A DNA stretch of 62,631 nt, filler included, from Bipalium vagum (taxonomy: Eukaryota): the NCBI GenBank assembly GCA_037834085.1. It is 3 parts of 3 records of this genome, joined end to end, with 100 filler letters (N's around TTAATTAATTAA, not from the genome) between each part and the next. Parts side by side here need not be neighbours in the genome. Positions count along the whole stretch, not along the records: positions 47,015 to 62,631 come from JBBMKC010155819.1; 2 more parts are not named here. The stretch is one strand, 5' to 3'. The notes below the pieces were generated by a model. The model had not been told where the DNA came from and did not search any database. It was given only the letters and a program-made list of their open reading frames with translations. Position numbers and translations under genes: made by a program. This document shows positions 47,015 to 57,358 of this stretch, piece by piece (the stretch's first letter is position 1; each line of letters begins with the position of its first letter).

Positions 47015-47055
<41 letters not shown>
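46845..47055. repeat. (AAT)n microsatellite spanning an assembly gap (46915-47014: 44 N + TTAATTAATTAA + 44 N)
   Basis: AAT runs on both sides of the gap. Confidence 0.95.
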
Positions 47056-47056
<1 letters not shown>

Positions 47057-47273
47057 TTTTTAAATTTTTATTAGGTATTTTGTGCTCAACGAATTTTTGT
47101 ATTATTATTATTATTATGATTATCAAATTAATTATATCCAGAATATTTTGTAAGGCAATATGAAATCTTCATCATTTTGAAAAGTAAAATGGAAGAAAAC
47201 CGAAATAATTTTTACCAATTTTCATTTTATATTTAACTTAATAACATCTCTGGTATCAAAGAAATGCGTCCCG

Positions 47274-47531
47274 TTAAAAGTTCCTCTTAGACTCCAAACA
47301 CCTTTGACAGGGGTCAAACACCTTGCCGAAATTCTGGGCCAATGAACGCTTTCCGAAAATCGTTCCACTATATCTCTGAAAGGTTCTTTTGGTGAGACCG
47401 TTGTCGGAATATACCGGCTCACGTTCGATTCCATAGAAGGTGCTCTGATCTTCATTTGTTGCTACTTTGCAGTTGTTGTTCACCAGCAGTTGAAGGAGAA
47501 TGAAAGCACCGAACGAAAGAGAGAATGACAT
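47274..47531 (-). CDS. Neuropeptide precursor, SIFamide-like (predicted TFQRYSGTIFamide)
   Basis: 85 aa: hydrophobic N-terminus (MSFSLSFGAFILLQLLV), acidic spacer, KR-TFQRYSGTIF-G-KR, then SLAQNFG-K and a Cys pair (CQRC) before another KR. Lies in a GC-richer island with a core promoter upstream. Confidence 0.75.
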   Translation of the reverse strand: MSFSLSFGAFILLQLLVNNNCKVATNEDQSTFYGIEREPVYSDNGLTKRTFQRYSGTIFGKRSLAQNFGKVFDPCQRCLESKRNF

Positions 47532-47535
47532 TTCG

Positions 47536-47573
47536 AATATGAGGAGAAATAGACGGAAATCACGTTTTAAATA
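47536..47573 (-). promoter_or_regulatory. Candidate TATA box plus initiator of the neuropeptide gene
   Basis: TATTTAAAA at 47573-47565 and Inr-like TCATATT at 47542-47536. The A+1 at 47540 is 33 nt from the TATA start and 9 nt before the ATG. Confidence 0.45.
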
Positions 47574-48299
47574 GACATTTCCTTGCCTCCATCGCCGAAT
47601 TGGAGGTTGGACATTATCCTCGAATCAGAACGGCGACAGAGGAAAGATCTGATTTGTTTCCCCTCCTTGATTGTGGACATGATCGCACTTCAAACGAAGC
47701 ATGCAGTCTGCAGAGAGAAATATTTTTCGAAAACAATTTTATTTATTTTTTTGAATTTCAAATATAAAATTCCCCATAAAATATTGTATTAAAATGTTAC
47801 GCCCAACCATTGAGATGATCAGGATGTCAGAAAGATATTTAACATCTGCCTTCTTGGAATATTGATCTTTAGAAGTAATTCTAGAAACAGCCTTTCTATT
47901 TTTAGTTTAACTGAAGAAAGATTACGTAACTTTTATAAAAAATTTCTAATAAAAAAAAGAAAGTTAAAATCTCACAAAGTTTGTGGTTATAGAATGTTTT
48001 AGGTCAACCTCGGATTGTTTTCAGGTAAATGGTTGTATCTATAAATAGTAACATCTTCGAATATTATCGGTGCAATATTTTCAAAACGGGAAGTCATACG
48101 GAAAGACTTTTGATTTTCTATATTAACTATGGAACACAGTGGTGAAAACTATGACGTCAAATAAGAAATTTCGGTCTACTTTTTAAAGTGATAATTGAAT
48201 ATTGATAATTTTTAATCAATTAATAATTGAAAATTGTATTTCGTTATTTAAGTAAGATATATATTTAATACAATTTGTTCCAATAATGTTTAAATATTG

Positions 48300-49370
48300 C
48301 AGAAAGATTTAAAATTATTATTATGATTGATCAAAAATTTGTTATTTTTATTTCAACTCAAATTAGGTGAAACTGCGGCTGATTGGTTTTTCAAAGTTTT
48401 TGGTAGCAACGTTATATCGGAACGTCAATGTCAAAATTGGTTTATGAGTTTAAAAATGGAGATGAGTGTCTGAAGGAATCAGAACATGGATATCGACCTT
48501 TGACTATAACTTTTGACTTGTTGAAAGAAAACATCGAGTCAGATCCTCAACAATTCCCGCGAACAACTTGTCCGTAAATTCGAATTTTTCTTAGAAGACT
48601 ATTTGTAACAACCTCGTCGCCTTGAGAAAACATGCAGGCATGGAAAATAAATTCTCCATGATTTGGCAGAGAGCAACAAAATCAGTCTTATTCTTCTCCG
48701 TTCTTCATTGCTCTCGCGGTCTAAAAATAAGGAATACTTTGATTCAATTTTAACATTAGATAAAAAGTGGATTCAATACGACAATCCACATATAAAATTG
48801 CAATGTTTGAGCAAATGTGATCAAACGATACCGATCCCAAAAGCTCAAAATCAAGTCAATAAGGTACTTCTTTGTGTCTGGTGGAATATATACTGTCAAG
48901 TGTATCTTGGGTTGCTCAATCGAGGAGAAAAAATAACTGCAGAAAAGTTATTGCCTACAATTAAGCTCTGTGGACCAAGCTCGGCAAGGAGTAAATATAG
49001 TAAAGACTAAATTGTTATATGATAATGCTCAACTGCATGTAGCAAAATTGACACAGCTGAAATTAGAGGACTAGGTTCAGCGGTTTTTCCTCATTCGCCA
49101 TAAACCATTGACTATCGACAAAAAAACTCACTTTTTCAGGTCTATGCAGCACTATTTGATTAGAAAAAAGATTTAAAATTTAGAGGACATTGAAAATTGG
49201 GTCAAGATTTACTAAATTTTTCAACAAATGGATTTGTGCTTTAACTGTAAGATGGTGAAACATCATTTATATAAATGGTGATCATTTCGTGATCATAGTG
49301 TACGCTTTGTTTCATGCATTAATAATATATATTGCAAAATCGAAATTTCTTATTAATCACCCTGATATTA
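48300..49370 (+). mobile_element. Decayed mariner
   Basis: ERQCQNWF, SILTLDKKWIQYDN, KVLLCVWWN, LLYDNAQLHVA, PHSP. Confidence 0.9.
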
Positions 49371-49409
49371 AAAAACAAATGTAAAATTGTTTAAATATGT
49401 AGTTAGTTT

Positions 49410-50455
49410 TATTTTGGGTGTGCATAAGTTTCCATCGCTCACATATTTATGATATTAGAAGTATAAAAATATTATGTACGCTTTGTTTGGCAATATTTTT
49501 GTTTAAGTAGGTCAATATTGATTATATTTATCTGTATTGTCTCAAAATTTATTTAAATTAACATATTTATTTACAGAAAATATTATGGAAATCAGTAAAA
49601 TGTATTTTCGCTTTTGTATGGTGTTCCTCTTCCATCAAACAACCAACCAGAATAATTTGCCAAACATATGGTTATGAAACAATAGCGGAGAGCTCATGTC
49701 GTGAATGGTCCAAGCACTTTAGAAGCGGTGTATGGATTTGGCAGATAAATAGTGAGCTAGTTGGCCATATAAAATGGATTCTGACAAATTGAAAGCGCTT
49801 TTGTAAGAAGATAGTATTTAATTGTGTGCAGAACTAGTGAGAAGGATTGCATTAGTGAGGAAAAATTCAATAAGAAGAATAATGGATTCATTTCGATTTT
49901 TTGGAGAACAATATGATCAGTTGATTTAAAAATTGTCGTTCGCGTCTACATAGACACGAAAAACAGTCTTTTTCATATCGAATTGTGACGAGAGACAAAA
50001 AATGGATATATTTTCATAATTATTATCGCAAAAGTTCGTTGGTAAATTCAAGAGATCTTAACAGAAAAAACGAAATATTCATGGCCTGAAGGTCTTTTGT
50101 GCATTATTGGAACATACAAAGAGTGCTTTATTATGAATTATTAAAGATATCCAAGACTGTTATTGCGGAAATATACAGTTGTCAATTGAAACAGATACAC
50201 TGAGAGTTAATTGAAAGAAGGCCATATCATGTAAGCAAACAAAATAAAGTTATTCTTCTGCTTGACACTGCCAGAATACATGTGGCATTAGATACGATGG
50301 AACCTTTGATATAATTAAAATTGGAAATTATACCTTACTCGGCATATTCTCCAGATATTGCTCCAACGGGTTTTCATTTATTTCGTTCTATGAAACATAG
50401 TCTGTCTGATGTACAATTTAGCAACACTGAATAAATGCAGAAATCGTTGACAACT
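49410..50455 (+). mobile_element. Decayed mariner
   Basis: TIR-like TTGGGTGTGCATAAGTTTCC; RIVTRDKKWIYF, LLDTARIHVA, YSPDIAPTGFHLFRSMKHSL. Confidence 0.9.
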
Positions 50456-50499
50456 TCATTCAATCAAAACCAAAAGACTTTGTTCACCGGATAATATTA

Positions 50500-51754
50500 A
50501 ATAAAAAAAAATCCAAAATGTCAAAAAATGAATTATAAACAAGAAATATGAAATTGCTAAGAAATTAGGCGAAGATGTTTCAGAAAGAAAATTCTCTAAA
50601 GATTTCAAAACAAGTAAAGGATTAGTAAACAAAATCAAACTGAAAAAACTGATGAACAAAGGAACAAGTCTGAATATGGAACTCCTTCAAAGAAATTCAT
50701 CGCAAGATCCTGATAAGATAACCTTTAAAGCTCAAAAAATAAAGTATTTTAGTTTTCCAGCGGCAAAACCAGCTCGAAAAACAACTGCTAAAGTCGACAG
50801 AACAATAATAAGCAAAACTTTACGACTTAGAATGAAACCCATCAACGAAATACACTCTGAAATTGTTACTTCAGATGTAAATATTTTGGCGAATAGAGGC
50901 AAACTTTATTGCTGATCGCTCAACCATAAAGAATAAGGTAACACCGGTCATAATAAAGAAGACACTAGCTTGGGGACTGAAATACAAACACTACGGGTAC
51001 ACACTTTGGTAAAAAAAATAATTTCTACAAAACGAATTTCATTGAATTGGTTTTATTTCTTACGTTAGGTTTGCTTCTGCGATGAAAGTTCAATCGTGAT
51101 TCTTCGTCGTATATTAAATGAAAGATTCTACTTATCTGAATGTGTAAGACAAAAGGTTAAGCATCCGACCCAAGTAATGATATGGTCCATTATAACTGTG
51201 AAAGAGTTTGAAAAACTTTATTCTGCGGATGGTAACATGAATTCACAGCAGTATCTGCAAGTGCTGCAGTATGAATTACTGCTTTAATTACGAATTTGGT
51301 TTCCTGGTCGTGAGCACCTTGGCACAGAGGTAAGGTAATTCAAAATTATTTCGATGCAGAAATAATATCATTATTGGGCTGGCCAGTTAAATCTCCTGCA
51401 TGAATACGATAGAGAATGTTGGAAGGCTTTGAAAGATCAGTTCAGTCTAGAAAAAGTGACTACGACATGTGAAATGATCGAGAAATTTAAGTATTTGTGG
51501 CATAACAACAAAAATTTTCAGGAGACAGCCATAAATTCTGTCGAAAGCATACAATCAAGCGTTCAGCTAATACTTAAAAATAACGGAATGTGGACTAAAT
51601 ATTATTTTTCTTTCATGCAATCGATATGAATAGCATTCTTTTCAGTTTAATAAATCATTATTCTTGTATTTAAAAATGAATTACGCAAAAAACCATTTTA
51701 AATTGAATTTACGATTTCTTTTGTTTGAGTCTATTTCAATGACCAGGTACTGTA
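50500..51754 (+). mobile_element. Decayed Tc1 element with 3' TIR
   Basis: RKTTAKVDRTI, VCFCDESS, VKHPTQVMIWS, WPVKSP...IENV, ILKNNGMWTKY. The 3' end reverse complement is TACAGTACCTGGTCATTGAAA. Confidence 0.9.
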
Positions 51755-52550: not shown

Positions 52551-54661
52551 ATAAAAAAGCTGATTTTTATCAAATTCGTTGACGTTCAATAACTCAGTTC
52601 AAACAAAACTTCATTATTCTGTATAATCCGTCCTGTGACACAGAGAAACAAGAACATTATACCAAGTGAAAATCTCTGAGATTCCTGGAGACGTGGTTTG
52701 GGCTGATCACTTTCAGTTCCTTAAAAGAATGTGCTGAGCGGGATCAATTGATTCATTGCGAAGGTTGTTCAACTTTCCTTTTGGTTTTAAAATCTTTACA
52801 AAACAAAAAAAACCCTTTACGAGAATTCGTCTTCATAGGAATTAAGCCGAACCCTTGTGAAACGTTTAAAAGTGCAACGTTTGTCCAATTCATAGAAATA
52901 TTATTACCATTTTTTTAGAATTAATCTTATTTTGATGGGGCAATTATTGTTAATTTTTAAAAGTACAAGTAATTCTCCTGTAAAAAATGTAAAATCAAAT
53001 GCTGTGGCCTAACCAAACAGGAAACCAAGTGCGACATAACAATTGTTTTCTAAAGAGATACATGGAGTCCGGGGTGTAAATTTTTCAGTTTTCAATTTTA
53101 CCAACAACAATTTTACATCCTTTGAGATTTTTCATTTTATAAAAAAATAAATAAAAACAATTTTTATTATTTTTCTTTAATATTTATGAACTTTTTTTAT
53201 GAAATTTTGATATATTAAAACAATTATTATCATAAAATTTATTGATTATCAATTTCGTGAAATAATAAAAATAAATCTATCATTTGACGAGGGACACATA
53301 AATTATTGGTCATTCCTTGATCTGATCACAATTATTACGGTTTCATCAGAAACTGTAAAGTGTGAGTCATGCTTTGGTCGACAGAAAAGACCCAGTCATT
53401 CTCCATGACAATGTCCAATGTCAATCGAACGTTTATTTGTGTAACCGAAACAAATAAACATGTTCAGACATTATTAAAATAGTATCAAACCAAAGGCCGG
53501 TTTATTTGATCGATAAAAGTGAAATTAACGCAGTACGGAAAACAGTAATAATAGTTATAATAATAATAATATCTCAAACAGTCTCTTTGAAATACCAAGC
53601 AGACCAAGAACAACGGCAGAGATCACAACGAACATTGAACAAGAATGTTTGGCTGAAGGGAGACGGGGAAAATATTTCCGGGAAAAGCAAAATCCGAACC
53701 CTCAATCAGGAACGGCATGAAGCATATCGAACGGAGGTGGAAAATAATTGGCATAATTGGAACAATAAAAGAAAGGTCCGTGACATGTACTTTCGTTAAA
53801 GAGCAGCATTCTCTCAAATGAGAACACCTTAACGAAACGGTACTCGTCGATTTCTAATTACTCCATCATCACTCTCCGCCACCCTGCTCCGTTCGACATT
53901 ACCATAAATTATTCACAAATCGTCCCAATGCTGCCGCTTGGATGCCTTCGTCGTCGCGGGGAAGCGAGGGGTCATGAGGTATTGCGTCGTTTTTGTCTCA
54001 TTACTTCTGCCTGTTGATGCTGCGGATGTCGATGCTGATGATACTACTGCTGCTCCTAATGATGCCGAGGCTGATGAGGCTGCAGGGAAAATATTTGCCT
54101 TTAATTAAATAAACTGCACTCATGTTAGAAATCATGTTGAAAAAATATTGTTTTTCGCCTTTCCCACCGATTCGCAGCGACTTGTCTCCGTCTCCCACAT
54201 TGATCGTGTTTCATTAATTGTTTTTGTGACCCCCTCCCGTTTGGTCTTGGGCCCAGCTCAGACTTATTCCTTGTAATGGCCTGCTCGCTGTCTCTCACCA
54301 AAGGGTTTTCCTTGTTATCCTTCGATATTTTTTTTGAGAAAAATTAAGAATTAAAACGAAAGACATTTAGTGTCATAAAATAACTTTTCTTTTTTTTCAA
54401 AATTATTAATAATAATTATTATTATAATATAAAAAAATGATAAGATGAATTAAAATGAAAAATATAAAAATAAATAATATTCAAAAATTAACGTAAAAAT
54501 TATGTGTAATTTTTTTTAATTTTGCTTTGTTTTAATTTTTTAAAATTTTAAAATTATTTTTAATTTTTTTTTATTATAATTTTTTTAGTTAATTATTTTA
54601 ATCTTATAGAAATTATAATGACTAAAATAGGCTTAACTATTTTTATTGATTTTCAAATTTT

Positions 54662-55776: not shown

Positions 55777-56462
55777 GAGTGTGTTCAAAAGTAGTAGCGC
55801 ATAGTTTAAACAACATAATTTTTACAATTATCAAATTATTGATTGGAAATTGTTACACACAATTGTGTCTTCCAATAGAAGATTAAGAAAGCTTTCAGTT
55901 CATATATAACATGTTTTAACTTTTGATTTATCAAGATAGAACCAGCCGAATAATTGAAATAGAAATCGTAAATTGACATTTGACCATTTTTGGCAGAAAA
56001 TGTGCCAAGAGGATCAATACAAAGCTTATTAAAGCGATTTATAGACGAAGATCGTATGGAATTTGTAAAGAAATTCAAAAACAATGAAAACCGAAGGAAA
56101 TAAAGAGGGTGAAATCCTCATTCATAAATAGTCCGTCAAAATCGGCTCGAACGCTGCTGAAGATTTGGATATTCATTAGAGTAGTGTTCACAAAATAAGA
56201 CAGACACAAAGGCATAAAAACATTAAAATCTCTTTCTTGCGAAAAAGAAGATGATGAGAATATTAAAAGAAAGAAATCATTTTCTTGTCCACCAGTCTTA
56301 GTGATATAAGTTAGAAAGGCTGATATTACCTTCCAATGACCTCAGTTCTCTCCAAAGATAAAGGAAAAAAATAAAAAATTACTTTGAAATGCTATTTATT
56401 AAAACAAATTATTAATCATTTTCTAAATATGAATAACGTCAAACAAGACAAGAGCATTTAAA

Positions 56463-57358
56463 TCATAGTAGACATTTTTCTGATCTCAACCCTTTAAGTT
56501 TAGCACATATGTTAGCATTATTCTCAAATTTGTAAGGACTCTCATAAGAGGTAATACACACCAAATAAAGCTTCAGTAAGGCCGTGACATTCTGAGACCC
56601 CTTCAGAAATGGGGAATTAAGAATTATAATATTCCATCTGTTTTCTTTAATATTGTTCTTCAGTTCTTCCAGATCAAACTCATCATCACCAAATTCAATT
56701 ATCAAACCCTTCTCATTACCGAACTTTTTCATATCCGAAATCTGTCGAATGCAACTTTTGTATTCACTGCACTTTCCGTCAGACAAAATTGAAACGGAAT
56801 TATTTCCAAGCAAGTCTTTATAATGTCTACTAAATGAAATCAGCTTAGACCTACCTCATGTACCCATGACGGCCACAATAGAACCTTTATTACTTAATAA
56901 TAAAGGTATGGCTTCCCTGTCATTAAAAGTAAAAAAACTAAACATTGTCTTTTCTAATTGATTTATCCGTGGTTTCACATTGTTTAAAAAAGCAAATGGT
57001 GGCTTCGATATATCGGAATAGAACTAAAAATATGATAAAATTATAAGTGAATAACAAAAACCGCCGACTTTGTCATTGTATCGTTTATTGATATAAATCT
57101 TTACGCTTTGACAATTGGTATTCGATTGACATATTTCAAGATAACCATACAAAAAGCAAACCGAAGTAAGCGCATTGAATTGGAAAGCTTTGCAATTGGC
57201 CATGAAACATTGAAGAGCACATTTAATTACCGATGAATCATTGGACATTTCAAAGTGGTTAAAAACGCATGACTCAACGACCATGAAGATCTCGTGGGAT
57301 ACGCATCAAATATTAAATTGAAAAGTAAAAGAATTACAGAAAATGTAATCGACAACAT
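56463..57358 (-). pseudogene. Disrupted secreted protein: signal peptide, PAN/Apple-like domain, TCAF-N-like region (2 exons)
   Basis: ATG 57358 encodes signal peptide MLSITFSVILLLFNLIF but is 1 nt out of frame with the PAN-like ORF (SVIKCALQCFMANCKAFQFNALTSVCFLY). A 45-nt GT-AG intron lies at 57068-57024. Exon 2 (57023-56463) is open except for TGA at 56858-56856. AATAAA follows at ~56400. Confidence 0.7.

What the first reader, a model, noticed from the sequence alone, without database searches (positions are those of the whole stretch)
47274..47531. Small unannotated-looking neuropeptide precursor encoding a divergent SIFamide-like peptide
Seen: signal-peptide-like N-terminus, acidic spacer, dibasic KR, TFQRYSGTIF-G (47384-47352), KR, a possible second amidated peptide SLAQNF-G-K, then a Cys pair and KR. 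Known: G-KR is the convertase/PAM amidation signal. Arthropod SIFamides end in NGSIFamide and their precursors carry a C-terminal Cys pair; echinoderm SALMFamides end in SxLxFamide. Inference: this is a divergent SIFamide/FFamide-type gene with an unusual layout (spacer before the peptide, CxxC rather than the wider Cys spacing, extra NFamide). It is small enough to be missed by gene finders and would point to a peptidergic signalling system in this animal.
Basis: partly seen in the sequence, partly recalled or inferred. Interest (0 to 1): 0.75.

Follow-up and report, generated by a model that had tools for sequence, protein, structure and literature searches.

The report
Small SIFamide-like neuropeptide precursor gene
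An intact 85-codon reading frame in a very AT-rich animal genome has every sequence mark of a small secreted neuropeptide precursor whose main product would end like arthropod SIFamide, but no transcript or relative could be found to prove that it is a working gene.

Summary
A minus-strand ATG-to-TAA frame of 85 codons lies at 47274-47531, with a hydrophobic N-terminus, an acidic spacer, KR, TFQRYSGTIF-G-KR, SLAQNF-G-K, a CxxC pair and a last KR.

It fills the 3' part of a sharp 450-bp island of 44-47% G+C in DNA of 29% G+C. The island ends at the stop codon. CCAAT, TATTTAAAA and an initiator-like site lie just upstream of the ATG.

Chance is unlikely. None of 20,000 dinucleotide shuffles of the island, and none of 17,534 ORFs in 40 Mb of simulated DNA, combined a signal-like start with a dibasic...G-dibasic cassette.

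The last six residues of the main peptide, YSGTIF-amide, resemble crustacean FNGSIF-amide. Two layout features of arthropod SIFamide precursors are not met.

No homologue, RNA run or annotation was found. A control search shows the protein databases barely cover this lineage.

Verdict: probably a real, unannotated neuropeptide gene (about 0.6). SIFamide-family membership is plausible but unproven (about 0.3). A flatworm SIFamide homologue, Attachin, is already in print, so this would be a new member of a known kind.

The parts
47274..47531 (-). 85-codon ORF (ATG 47531-47529, TAA 47276-47274): candidate prepro-neuropeptide
   Evidence: G+C 44% against 29% for the piece
47469..47531 (-). signal-peptide-like N-terminus, residues 1-21, hydrophobic core LSFGAFILLQLLV
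   Evidence: own hydrophobicity rule only, cleavage site not predicted
47391..47468 (-). acidic spacer, residues 22-47 (5 D/E, 2 K/R)
47346..47390 (-). KR - TFQRYSGTIF - G - KR cassette: predicted amidated decapeptide (MH+ 1218.63), or YSGTIF-amide (MH+ 686.35) if the inner Arg is also cut
   Evidence: only such cassette in the piece
47322..47345 (-). SLAQNF-G-K: possible second amidated peptide, needs a single-Lys cut
   Evidence: inference
47277..47321 (-). C-terminal part VFDPCQRCLES-KR-NF with Cys75-x2-Cys78
47532..47714 (-). G+C-rich upstream part of the island: CCAAT 47603-47599, TATTTAAAA 47573-47565, initiator-like TCATATT with A at 47540. Candidate core promoter. It carries several ATGs, so it is unlikely to be a 5' UTR
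   Evidence: positions read from the sequence, function inferred
47700..47712 (-). tttctctctgcag, an acceptor-like string at the 5' edge of the island: the alternative is an exon start with an upstream non-coding exon
   Evidence: not testable without RNA
47068..47073 (-). first canonical AATAAA after the stop, about 200 nt downstream: candidate poly(A) signal
   Evidence: inference; coordinates counted by eye from the ruler and may be off by a base or two

Best explanation
This is most likely a real, intronless, unannotated gene for a small secreted prohormone. Inferred mechanism: the N-terminal hydrophobic segment directs the 85-residue product into the secretory pathway. A PC2-type convertase cuts after KR48-49 and KR61-62. 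A carboxypeptidase removes the basic residues. Peptidylglycine amidating enzymes use Gly60 to give TFQRYSGTIF-amide, or YSGTIF-amide if Arg53, which has a basic residue four places before it, is also cut. The rest gives either SLAQNF-amide plus an 11-residue CxxC peptide, or one 19-residue CxxC peptide. The amidated ...GTIF-amide peptide would act on a G-protein-coupled receptor. By its C-terminus the most likely type is the NPFF/SIFamide receptor family. That would make the gene the free-living-flatworm counterpart of arthropod SIFamide and perhaps of cestode Attachin. Shown: the frame, the motifs, the island and the promoter-like strings. Inferred: secretion, processing, amidation, the receptor and the animal group. 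I give about 0.6 that it is a working neuropeptide gene and about 0.3 that it is a true SIFamide-family orthologue.
For: The ORF is intact with the full prohormone grammar. None of 20,000 island shuffles and none of 17,534 simulated ORFs (40 Mb) had both a signal-like start and a dibasic...G-dibasic cassette. The island of 44-47% G+C in 29% DNA ends at the stop codon. CCAAT, TATA and an initiator-like site lie 72, 42 and 9 nt before the ATG. No other frame of the island has a family or a relative: 5 alternative ORFs were scanned in Pfam and the best E-value was 0.16; the word search on the 77-aa overlapping ORF was blank. No terminal repeats of a mobile element flank the island. The C-terminal hexapeptide YSGTIF plus GKR compares with prawn and shrimp FNGSIF plus GKR, and a Cys pair lies in the following peptide as in the prawn precursor. 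Planarians are reported to have PC2, CPE and amidating enzymes (abstract and passages). SIFamide/NPFF-type receptors are reported in a monogenean, and a SIFamide-receptor-like contig in Schmidtea. A cestode SIFamide homologue is in print (title only). Earlier notes of this scan describe other intronless neuropeptide genes of 78-91 codons in this genome; these are leads, not tested here.
Against: There is no transcript evidence: the one run that holds the DNA is not RNA. No relative was found. Pfam gave 0 families and the word search gave 0 candidates. HMMER against 1.84 billion representatives gave 5 hits; the 3 of 5 I inspected are long repeat proteins, and there was no self hit. The metagenome scan gave 271 pattern matches, none confirmed. 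The exact sequence is not among 15 billion proteins. The island is stop-poor in general: a 77-aa ORF overlaps in another frame, and 9% of shuffles give an ORF of at least 85 aa. Codon choice shows no signal beyond the island's composition (15 C-ending against 13 T-ending codons, P = 0.22). The inferred 5' UTR would be only about 9 nt. The signal-peptide cleavage site is not clean and no SignalP was run. For SIFamide membership, there is a spacer before the peptide, the Cys pair is C-x2-C, and there is no LxF-amide.
Confidence: 0.6

Rival explanations
1. It is a chance reading frame. The G+C-rich island is something else, such as a regulatory element, a relic of foreign or mobile DNA, or a non-coding exon. 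Its low stop-codon density happens to leave a frame that looks like a prohormone.
For: No RNA, no relative and no annotation were found. A second ORF of 77 aa overlaps in another frame. 1,810 of 20,000 island shuffles give an ATG ORF of at least 85 aa. There is no codon-usage signal beyond local composition. The G+C-rich part runs 183 bp beyond the ATG.
Against: None of 20,000 shuffles and none of 17,534 simulated ORFs showed both prohormone features. The island ends at the stop codon. TATA and an initiator-like site sit at the right distance from the first ATG. The amidated peptide's last six residues match a known peptide family. There are no repeats or mobile-element ends around it, and no diverged copies at 80% or more were laid from run X1 (though the tool warns that a hole proves nothing).
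Confidence: 0.28
2. It is a real neuropeptide gene, but lineage-specific. It makes an F-amide peptide that resembles SIFamide only by convergence, and it acts on a flatworm-specific or different receptor.
For: Most flatworm peptides are said to lack similarity to those of other animals; this is my recollection of the Preza 2022 abstract, which I could not read. The only universal feature of the NPFF/SIFamide family is a C-terminal Phe-amide (passage). The layout differs from arthropod precursors. The LxF-amide of mollusc and annelid members is absent.
Against: Six-residue similarity including Gly-x-Ile-Phe-amide, plus GKR and a downstream Cys pair, is more than a shared Phe-amide. Flatworms are reported to have SIFamide/NPFF-type receptors and a SIFamide homologue (title).
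Confidence: 0.3
3. It is a real small secreted protein that is not a neuropeptide, for example a gland product or a defence peptide, or it is the last exon of a larger gene that enters at the acceptor-like site at 47712.
For: There is an acceptor-like tttctctctgcag at the island's 5' edge. A CxxC motif is present. No expression data exist to place it in neurons.
Against: An in-frame stop lies between the acceptor-like site and the ATG, so no upstream coding exon can join this frame. The G-KR cassette is the hallmark of amidated peptides. The product is very small.
Confidence: 0.07

Closest known systems
Arthropod SIFamide precursor (e.g. Macrobrachium rosenbergii, 76 aa; Lysmata vittata, 76 aa; passages seen)
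   Same: Both are very small precursors (76 against 85 aa). Both carry one amidated peptide ending aromatic-polar-G-S/T-I-F followed by G-K-R. In both, a short C-terminal peptide follows that contains GK and then a pair of Cys.
   Different: In arthropods the peptide follows the 27-residue signal peptide directly; here a 26-residue acidic spacer and a KR come first. The Cys spacing is x6 in prawn and x2 here. The N-terminal half of the peptide (YRKPP in prawn) is not shared. Here there is a possible extra NF-amide and a last KR-NF.
Attachin, the cestode SIFamide homologue (Preza et al. 2022, J Neurochem 162:467; only the title was seen, in the reference lists; the paper is not held)
   Same: If the genome is a flatworm's, this is the nearest published relative by taxon and by claimed family.
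   Different: Unknown. I could not see its sequence, so no comparison was made. This is the main gap of the report.
Lophotrochozoan SIFamide-type peptides of Lottia, Capitella, Platynereis and nemerteans (passages)
   Same: A C-terminal Phe-amide, and membership of the spiralian clade to which flatworms belong.
   Different: These are reported to keep an LxF-amide motif. Here the corresponding residue is Thr (T-I-F), so the peptide looks more like the arthropod form than the mollusc or annelid form.
The 51-52 known planarian prohormone genes (Collins et al. 2010: outline, section 8 and passages; 2026 preprint: abstract and passages)
   Same: The same kind of gene: small, with a signal peptide, dibasic sites and Gly amidation, processed by PC2.
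   Different: None of the named families is a SIFamide type. None of my six motif terms from the ORF occurs in the main text of Collins 2010 or Ong 2016. The sequences are in supplements that were closed, so identity with one of the spp genes is not excluded.

Membership tests
SIFamide / NPFF-type neuropeptide precursors | Peptide ends in Phe-amide (Gly donor plus dibasic site), the only feature universal to the family | tested here: met
   ...TIF-G-KR at 47346-47360
SIFamide / NPFF-type neuropeptide precursors | Extended arthropod motif ...FNGSIF-amide | tested here: inconclusive
   YSGTIF against FNGSIF: G, I and F are identical; Y/F, S/N and T/S are conservative. Compared by eye only.
SIFamide / NPFF-type neuropeptide precursors | LxF-amide motif reported for lophotrochozoan members | tested here: not met
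   The residue two before the Phe is Thr (T-I-F)
SIFamide / NPFF-type neuropeptide precursors | Peptide lies directly after the signal peptide (arthropod layout) | tested here: not met
   A 26-residue acidic spacer and KR precede it. The nematode member NLP-10 is named, but its layout was not seen.
SIFamide / NPFF-type neuropeptide precursors | C-terminal precursor-related peptide with a Cys pair | tested here: inconclusive
   A Cys pair is present (Cys75, Cys78) but as C-x2-C; prawn has C-x6-C
SIFamide / NPFF-type neuropeptide precursors | Cognate NPFF/SIFamide-type receptor in the same genome, activated by the peptide | not testable with these tools
   Only this 15.6-kb piece is readable. 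The literature reports such receptors in a monogenean and a receptor-like contig in Schmidtea.
SIFamide / NPFF-type neuropeptide precursors | Orthologues in related species, including alignment with flatworm Attachin | not testable with these tools
A control shows poor coverage of this lineage.
Amidated neuropeptide prohormones in general | N-terminal signal peptide | tested here: inconclusive
   There is an uncharged hydrophobic core of 13 residues, mean Kyte-Doolittle 2.49 over 11. 166 of 2,691 simulated ORFs pass the same rule. No SignalP was run and the cleavage site is unclear.
Amidated neuropeptide prohormones in general | Peptide flanked by dibasic sites with a C-terminal Gly | tested here: met
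   KR-10 residues-G-KR. 77 of 17,534 simulated ORFs have such a cassette.
Amidated neuropeptide prohormones in general | Expressed in neurons or endocrine cells; peptide detectable | not testable with these tools
   No RNA run holds the stretch
Echinoderm SALMFamides | SxLxF-amide or SxFxF-amide, several copies per precursor | tested here: not met
   S-G-T-I-F has Thr at the L/F position and occurs as a single copy. One search reports that SIFamide-type receptors appear absent from the sea urchin and that the similarity may be convergent.

The most novel reading that the evidence does not exclude
A free-living flatworm makes a SIFamide-type peptide whose C-terminus (x-G-S/T-I-F-amide) is of the arthropod form, not the LxF-amide form of molluscs and annelids. 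It comes from a precursor with a rearranged layout: a spacer before the peptide, a CxxC pair and a possible extra NF-amide. That would place the G-S/T-I-F-amide motif in the last common ancestor of protostomes. It would add a gene to the 52 known planarian neuropeptide genes and give a candidate ligand for orphan planarian NPFF/SIFamide-type receptors.
Probability: 0.3. Interest if true: 0.55.

Novelty: new member of a known kind. Interest (0 to 1): 0.4.

Why it matters
If real, the gene adds a conserved bilaterian peptide system (NPFF/SIFamide) to the free-living flatworm repertoire. That repertoire is still quoted as 52 genes, and none of them is named as a SIFamide type. It offers a defined ten-residue peptide that can be tested at once, by receptor assay, RNAi and mass spectrometry, in animals used to study regeneration, feeding and reproduction. 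In cestodes the reported homologue stimulates motility and attachment (title seen), so a planarian counterpart would give a tractable model for that signalling. If it is a chance frame, it shows how closely G+C-rich islands in AT-rich genomes can mimic prohormones.

Tried and rejected
Family and homology searches all came back empty.
- Pfam on the ORF: 0 families at E up to 10.
- Word search: no candidate.
- HMMER against 1.84 billion representatives: 5 hits at E up to 0.001. The 3 of 5 I inspected (P0001, P0002, P0004) are repeat proteins of 580-1,248 aa matched in 5-6 stretches each. P0003 and P0005 were not inspected but have the same pattern. There was no self hit.
- Metagenome scan: 271 pattern matches, none confirmed.
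- Exact look-up among 15 billion proteins: absent.

As a control, a multi-copy mariner ORF from the same piece also found nothing: 14 candidates, none at E up to 0.001. I therefore treat the blanks as uninformative. I reject the argument "no relatives, hence not a gene" and equally "no relatives, hence new".

Reads: one run holds the DNA and it is not RNA. Its contigs left a hole over 47249-47716, which the tool says proves nothing.

Codon bias is not different from the island's composition, so I rejected it as evidence. The alternative frames of the island have no family and no relative. No mobile-element ends flank it. There is no paralogue in the piece; the one other IFG-dibasic string, at 55986-56000, sits just after a stop. 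Rfam gave 0 matches in the piece. The sigma-70 and terminator scan is irrelevant to an animal gene.

Literature: a six-residue motif of the peptide occurs in 0 papers. None of my six motif terms occurs in the main text of Collins 2010 or Ong 2016. No open paper found or 69 describes a planarian SIFamide. Supplements, where the planarian peptide lists are, were closed, so the claim "not among known planarian prohormones" is unproven. The SALMFamide link was rejected. The animal group (flatworm or planarian) comes only from earlier notes of this scan. I did not test it: the piece holds no conserved host gene.

Full report
WHAT IS THERE. On the minus strand, an ATG at 47531 opens a frame of 85 codons that ends with TAA at 47276-47274. 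One search places the parts as follows:
- Residues 1-21: hydrophobic and uncharged, with the core LSFGAFILLQLLV.
- Residues 22-47: an acidic spacer (5 D/E, 2 K/R).
- KR48-49, then TFQRYSGTIF (50-59, 47355-47384), Gly60 and KR61-62.
- SLAQNF (63-68) and GK (69-70).
- VFDPCQRCLES (71-81, with Cys75 and Cys78), KR82-83 and NF.

IS IT MORE THAN CHANCE. The piece has 29% G+C and the ORF has 44%. At 100-bp resolution, one island of 40-47% G+C runs from 47265 to 47714. It is flanked by 22% on the 3' side and 22-31% on the 5' side. The stop codon sits at its 3' edge.

Because such an island is poor in stop codons, ORF length alone means little. 1,810 of 20,000 dinucleotide shuffles of the island gave an ATG ORF of at least 85 aa, and a 77-aa ORF overlaps in another frame. 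The grammar is what counts. Of those shuffles, 26 also had a signal-like start, 31 also had a dibasic...G-dibasic cassette, and 0 had both.

In 40 Mb simulated from the piece's trinucleotide content, 77 of 17,534 ORFs of 60-150 aa had the cassette and none also had the signal-like start. In a 6-Mb run, 166 of 2,691 ORFs passed the signal rule. That bounds chance cases to fewer than about 75 per Gb, so a genome-wide scan could still turn up some. Codon choice adds nothing: C-ending against T-ending two-fold codons are 15:13, which does not differ from the island's composition (P = 0.22).

GENE ANATOMY. Upstream of the ATG, in the G+C-rich part, lie CCAAT (47603-47599), TATTTAAAA (47573-47565, unique in the window) and TCATATT with its A at 47540. 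With a start at 47540, the TATA box begins at -33 and the leader is only 9 nt.

The frame is closed by a stop about 90 nt upstream of the ATG. The 183 bp upstream carry several ATGs, which argues against a long 5' UTR. The island's 5' edge reads tttctctctgcag, an acceptor-like string, so an upstream non-coding exon cannot be excluded. The first AATAAA lies about 200 nt after the stop. No direct or inverted repeats of a mobile element flank the island. All of this is read from sequence; function is inferred.

SURROUNDINGS. From about 48160 to beyond 50500 lies degraded mariner-type DNA. Pfam finds HTH_48 (E = 2e-6) and Transposase_1 (E = 1.7e-7). It is present in very many diverged copies in the one run that holds this DNA. 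The other ORFs tested in the piece have no family. Rfam finds nothing. There is no second ...FG-dibasic cassette in an open frame.

SEARCH FOR RELATIVES AND EXPRESSION. Every search was blank:
- Pfam: 0 families.
- Word search: 0 candidates.
- HMMER against 1.84 billion representatives: 5 hits. The 3 of 5 inspected are long repeat proteins matched in several stretches, and there is no self hit.
- Metagenome scan: 271 pattern matches, none confirmed.
- Exact look-up among 15 billion proteins: the sequence is absent.

A control with a multi-copy mariner ORF from the same piece also found nothing. The databases therefore hardly cover this lineage, and the blanks say little either way. Only one run holds the DNA, and it is not on record as RNA. 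Its contigs left a hole over 47249-47716, exactly the island, which the tool says proves nothing. I have noted this as unexplained. The alternative frames of the island have no family and no relative.

WHAT ANIMAL. Earlier notes of this scan call the genome a flatworm, probably a planarian. They also describe other small intronless neuropeptide genes in it. I did not test this: the piece holds no conserved host gene. The 29% G+C and the mariner debris are compatible with it.

COMPARISON WITH KNOWN FAMILIES. The prawn SIFamide precursor is 76 aa. It has a 27-residue signal peptide followed directly by GYRKPPFNGSIF-amide, then a dibasic site, then a precursor-related peptide with GK and a C-x6-C pair (passages). 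The shrimp precursor is the same size with the same peptide. The window's peptide shares the last six positions: Y/F, S/N, G, T/S, I, F. It also shares the G-K-R and a following peptide with GK and a Cys pair.

Three things differ. A spacer plus KR precede the peptide. The Cys pair is C-x2-C. The N-terminal half of the peptide is unrelated.

Elphick and Mirabeau (passages) state two relevant points. The only universal feature of NPFF/SIFamide peptides is the Phe-amide. Mollusc and annelid members keep LxF-amide, which this peptide lacks. Membership therefore cannot be decided by sequence; in this family it rests on the receptor.

Flatworm context from the literature:
- A monogenean is reported to have SIFa/NPFF-type receptors.
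- A Schmidtea contig has a SIFamide receptor as its best hit.
- Preza et al. 2022 describe Attachin as a SIFamide homologue of cestodes. I saw only the title, in two reference lists; the paper is not held. Anything else I say of it is recalled.
- Planarians are still credited with 52 neuropeptide genes, and none of the family names listed in Collins's Table 1 is a SIFamide type.
- The peptide lists are in supplements I could not open.
- A six-residue motif of the peptide is in no held paper.

HOW IT MOST LIKELY WORKS. All of this is inferred. The protein is secreted. A PC2-type convertase cuts at the two KR sites. The basic residues are trimmed and Gly60 is used for amidation. This gives TFQRYSGTIF-amide (MH+ 1218.63). 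Arg53 has a basic residue four places before it, so it could be a monobasic cleavage site of the kind described (the four-places-before rule itself is recalled); cutting there would give YSGTIF-amide (686.35). The C-terminal part gives either SLAQNF-amide plus an 11-residue disulphide peptide, or one 19-residue peptide. The amidated peptide would signal through a GPCR, most likely of the NPFF/SIFamide type.

VERDICT. I give about 0.6 that this is a working neuropeptide gene, and about 0.3 that it is a true SIFamide-family member. Of that 0.6, the other half (about 0.3) is a real but lineage-specific gene that resembles SIFamide only by convergence. The remaining 0.4 is about 0.28 for a chance frame in a G+C-rich island plus about 0.07 for a non-neural secreted protein or an exon of a larger gene; these rough estimates do not sum exactly.

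It would be a new member of a known kind, of moderate interest. It is useful mainly because the peptide is short, defined and testable at once. The scan has noted other neuropeptide genes in this genome before, but none at this place and none of this type.

Noticed in passing
window 48160-50500: Degraded mariner/Mos1-type transposon DNA. ORFs match Pfam HTH_48 and Transposase_1. Very many diverged copies (80-95% alike) are present in the contigs of run X1, with many internal deletions.
   Followed up: partly
window 47249-47716: read laying laid no contig of run X1 on exactly the G+C-rich island, although the index says the run holds all sampled words of 47100-47800. The tool warns that a filter drops records. 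The coincidence is unexplained.
   Followed up: no
window 53565-54300: A second, stronger G+C-rich island (up to 54% G+C in 100-bp windows) with only short ORFs. Two were tested in Pfam without a match. Its nature is unknown.
   Followed up: partly
window 56463-56813 (-): A 116-aa TTG-start ORF in a locally G+C-richer stretch, with no Pfam family. It could be a small gene, an exon or chance.
   Followed up: partly
window 47015-47135: An (ATA)n/(TAT)n microsatellite pair forms long imperfect inverted repeats at the start of the piece, just beyond the candidate poly(A) signal.
   Followed up: no
window 48150-48160 (-): A perfect CRE-like palindrome, TGACGTCA, sits at the boundary where the repeated mariner-like DNA begins, about 600 bp upstream of the ORF. 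It is probably part of the repeat's flank, not of the gene.
   Followed up: no
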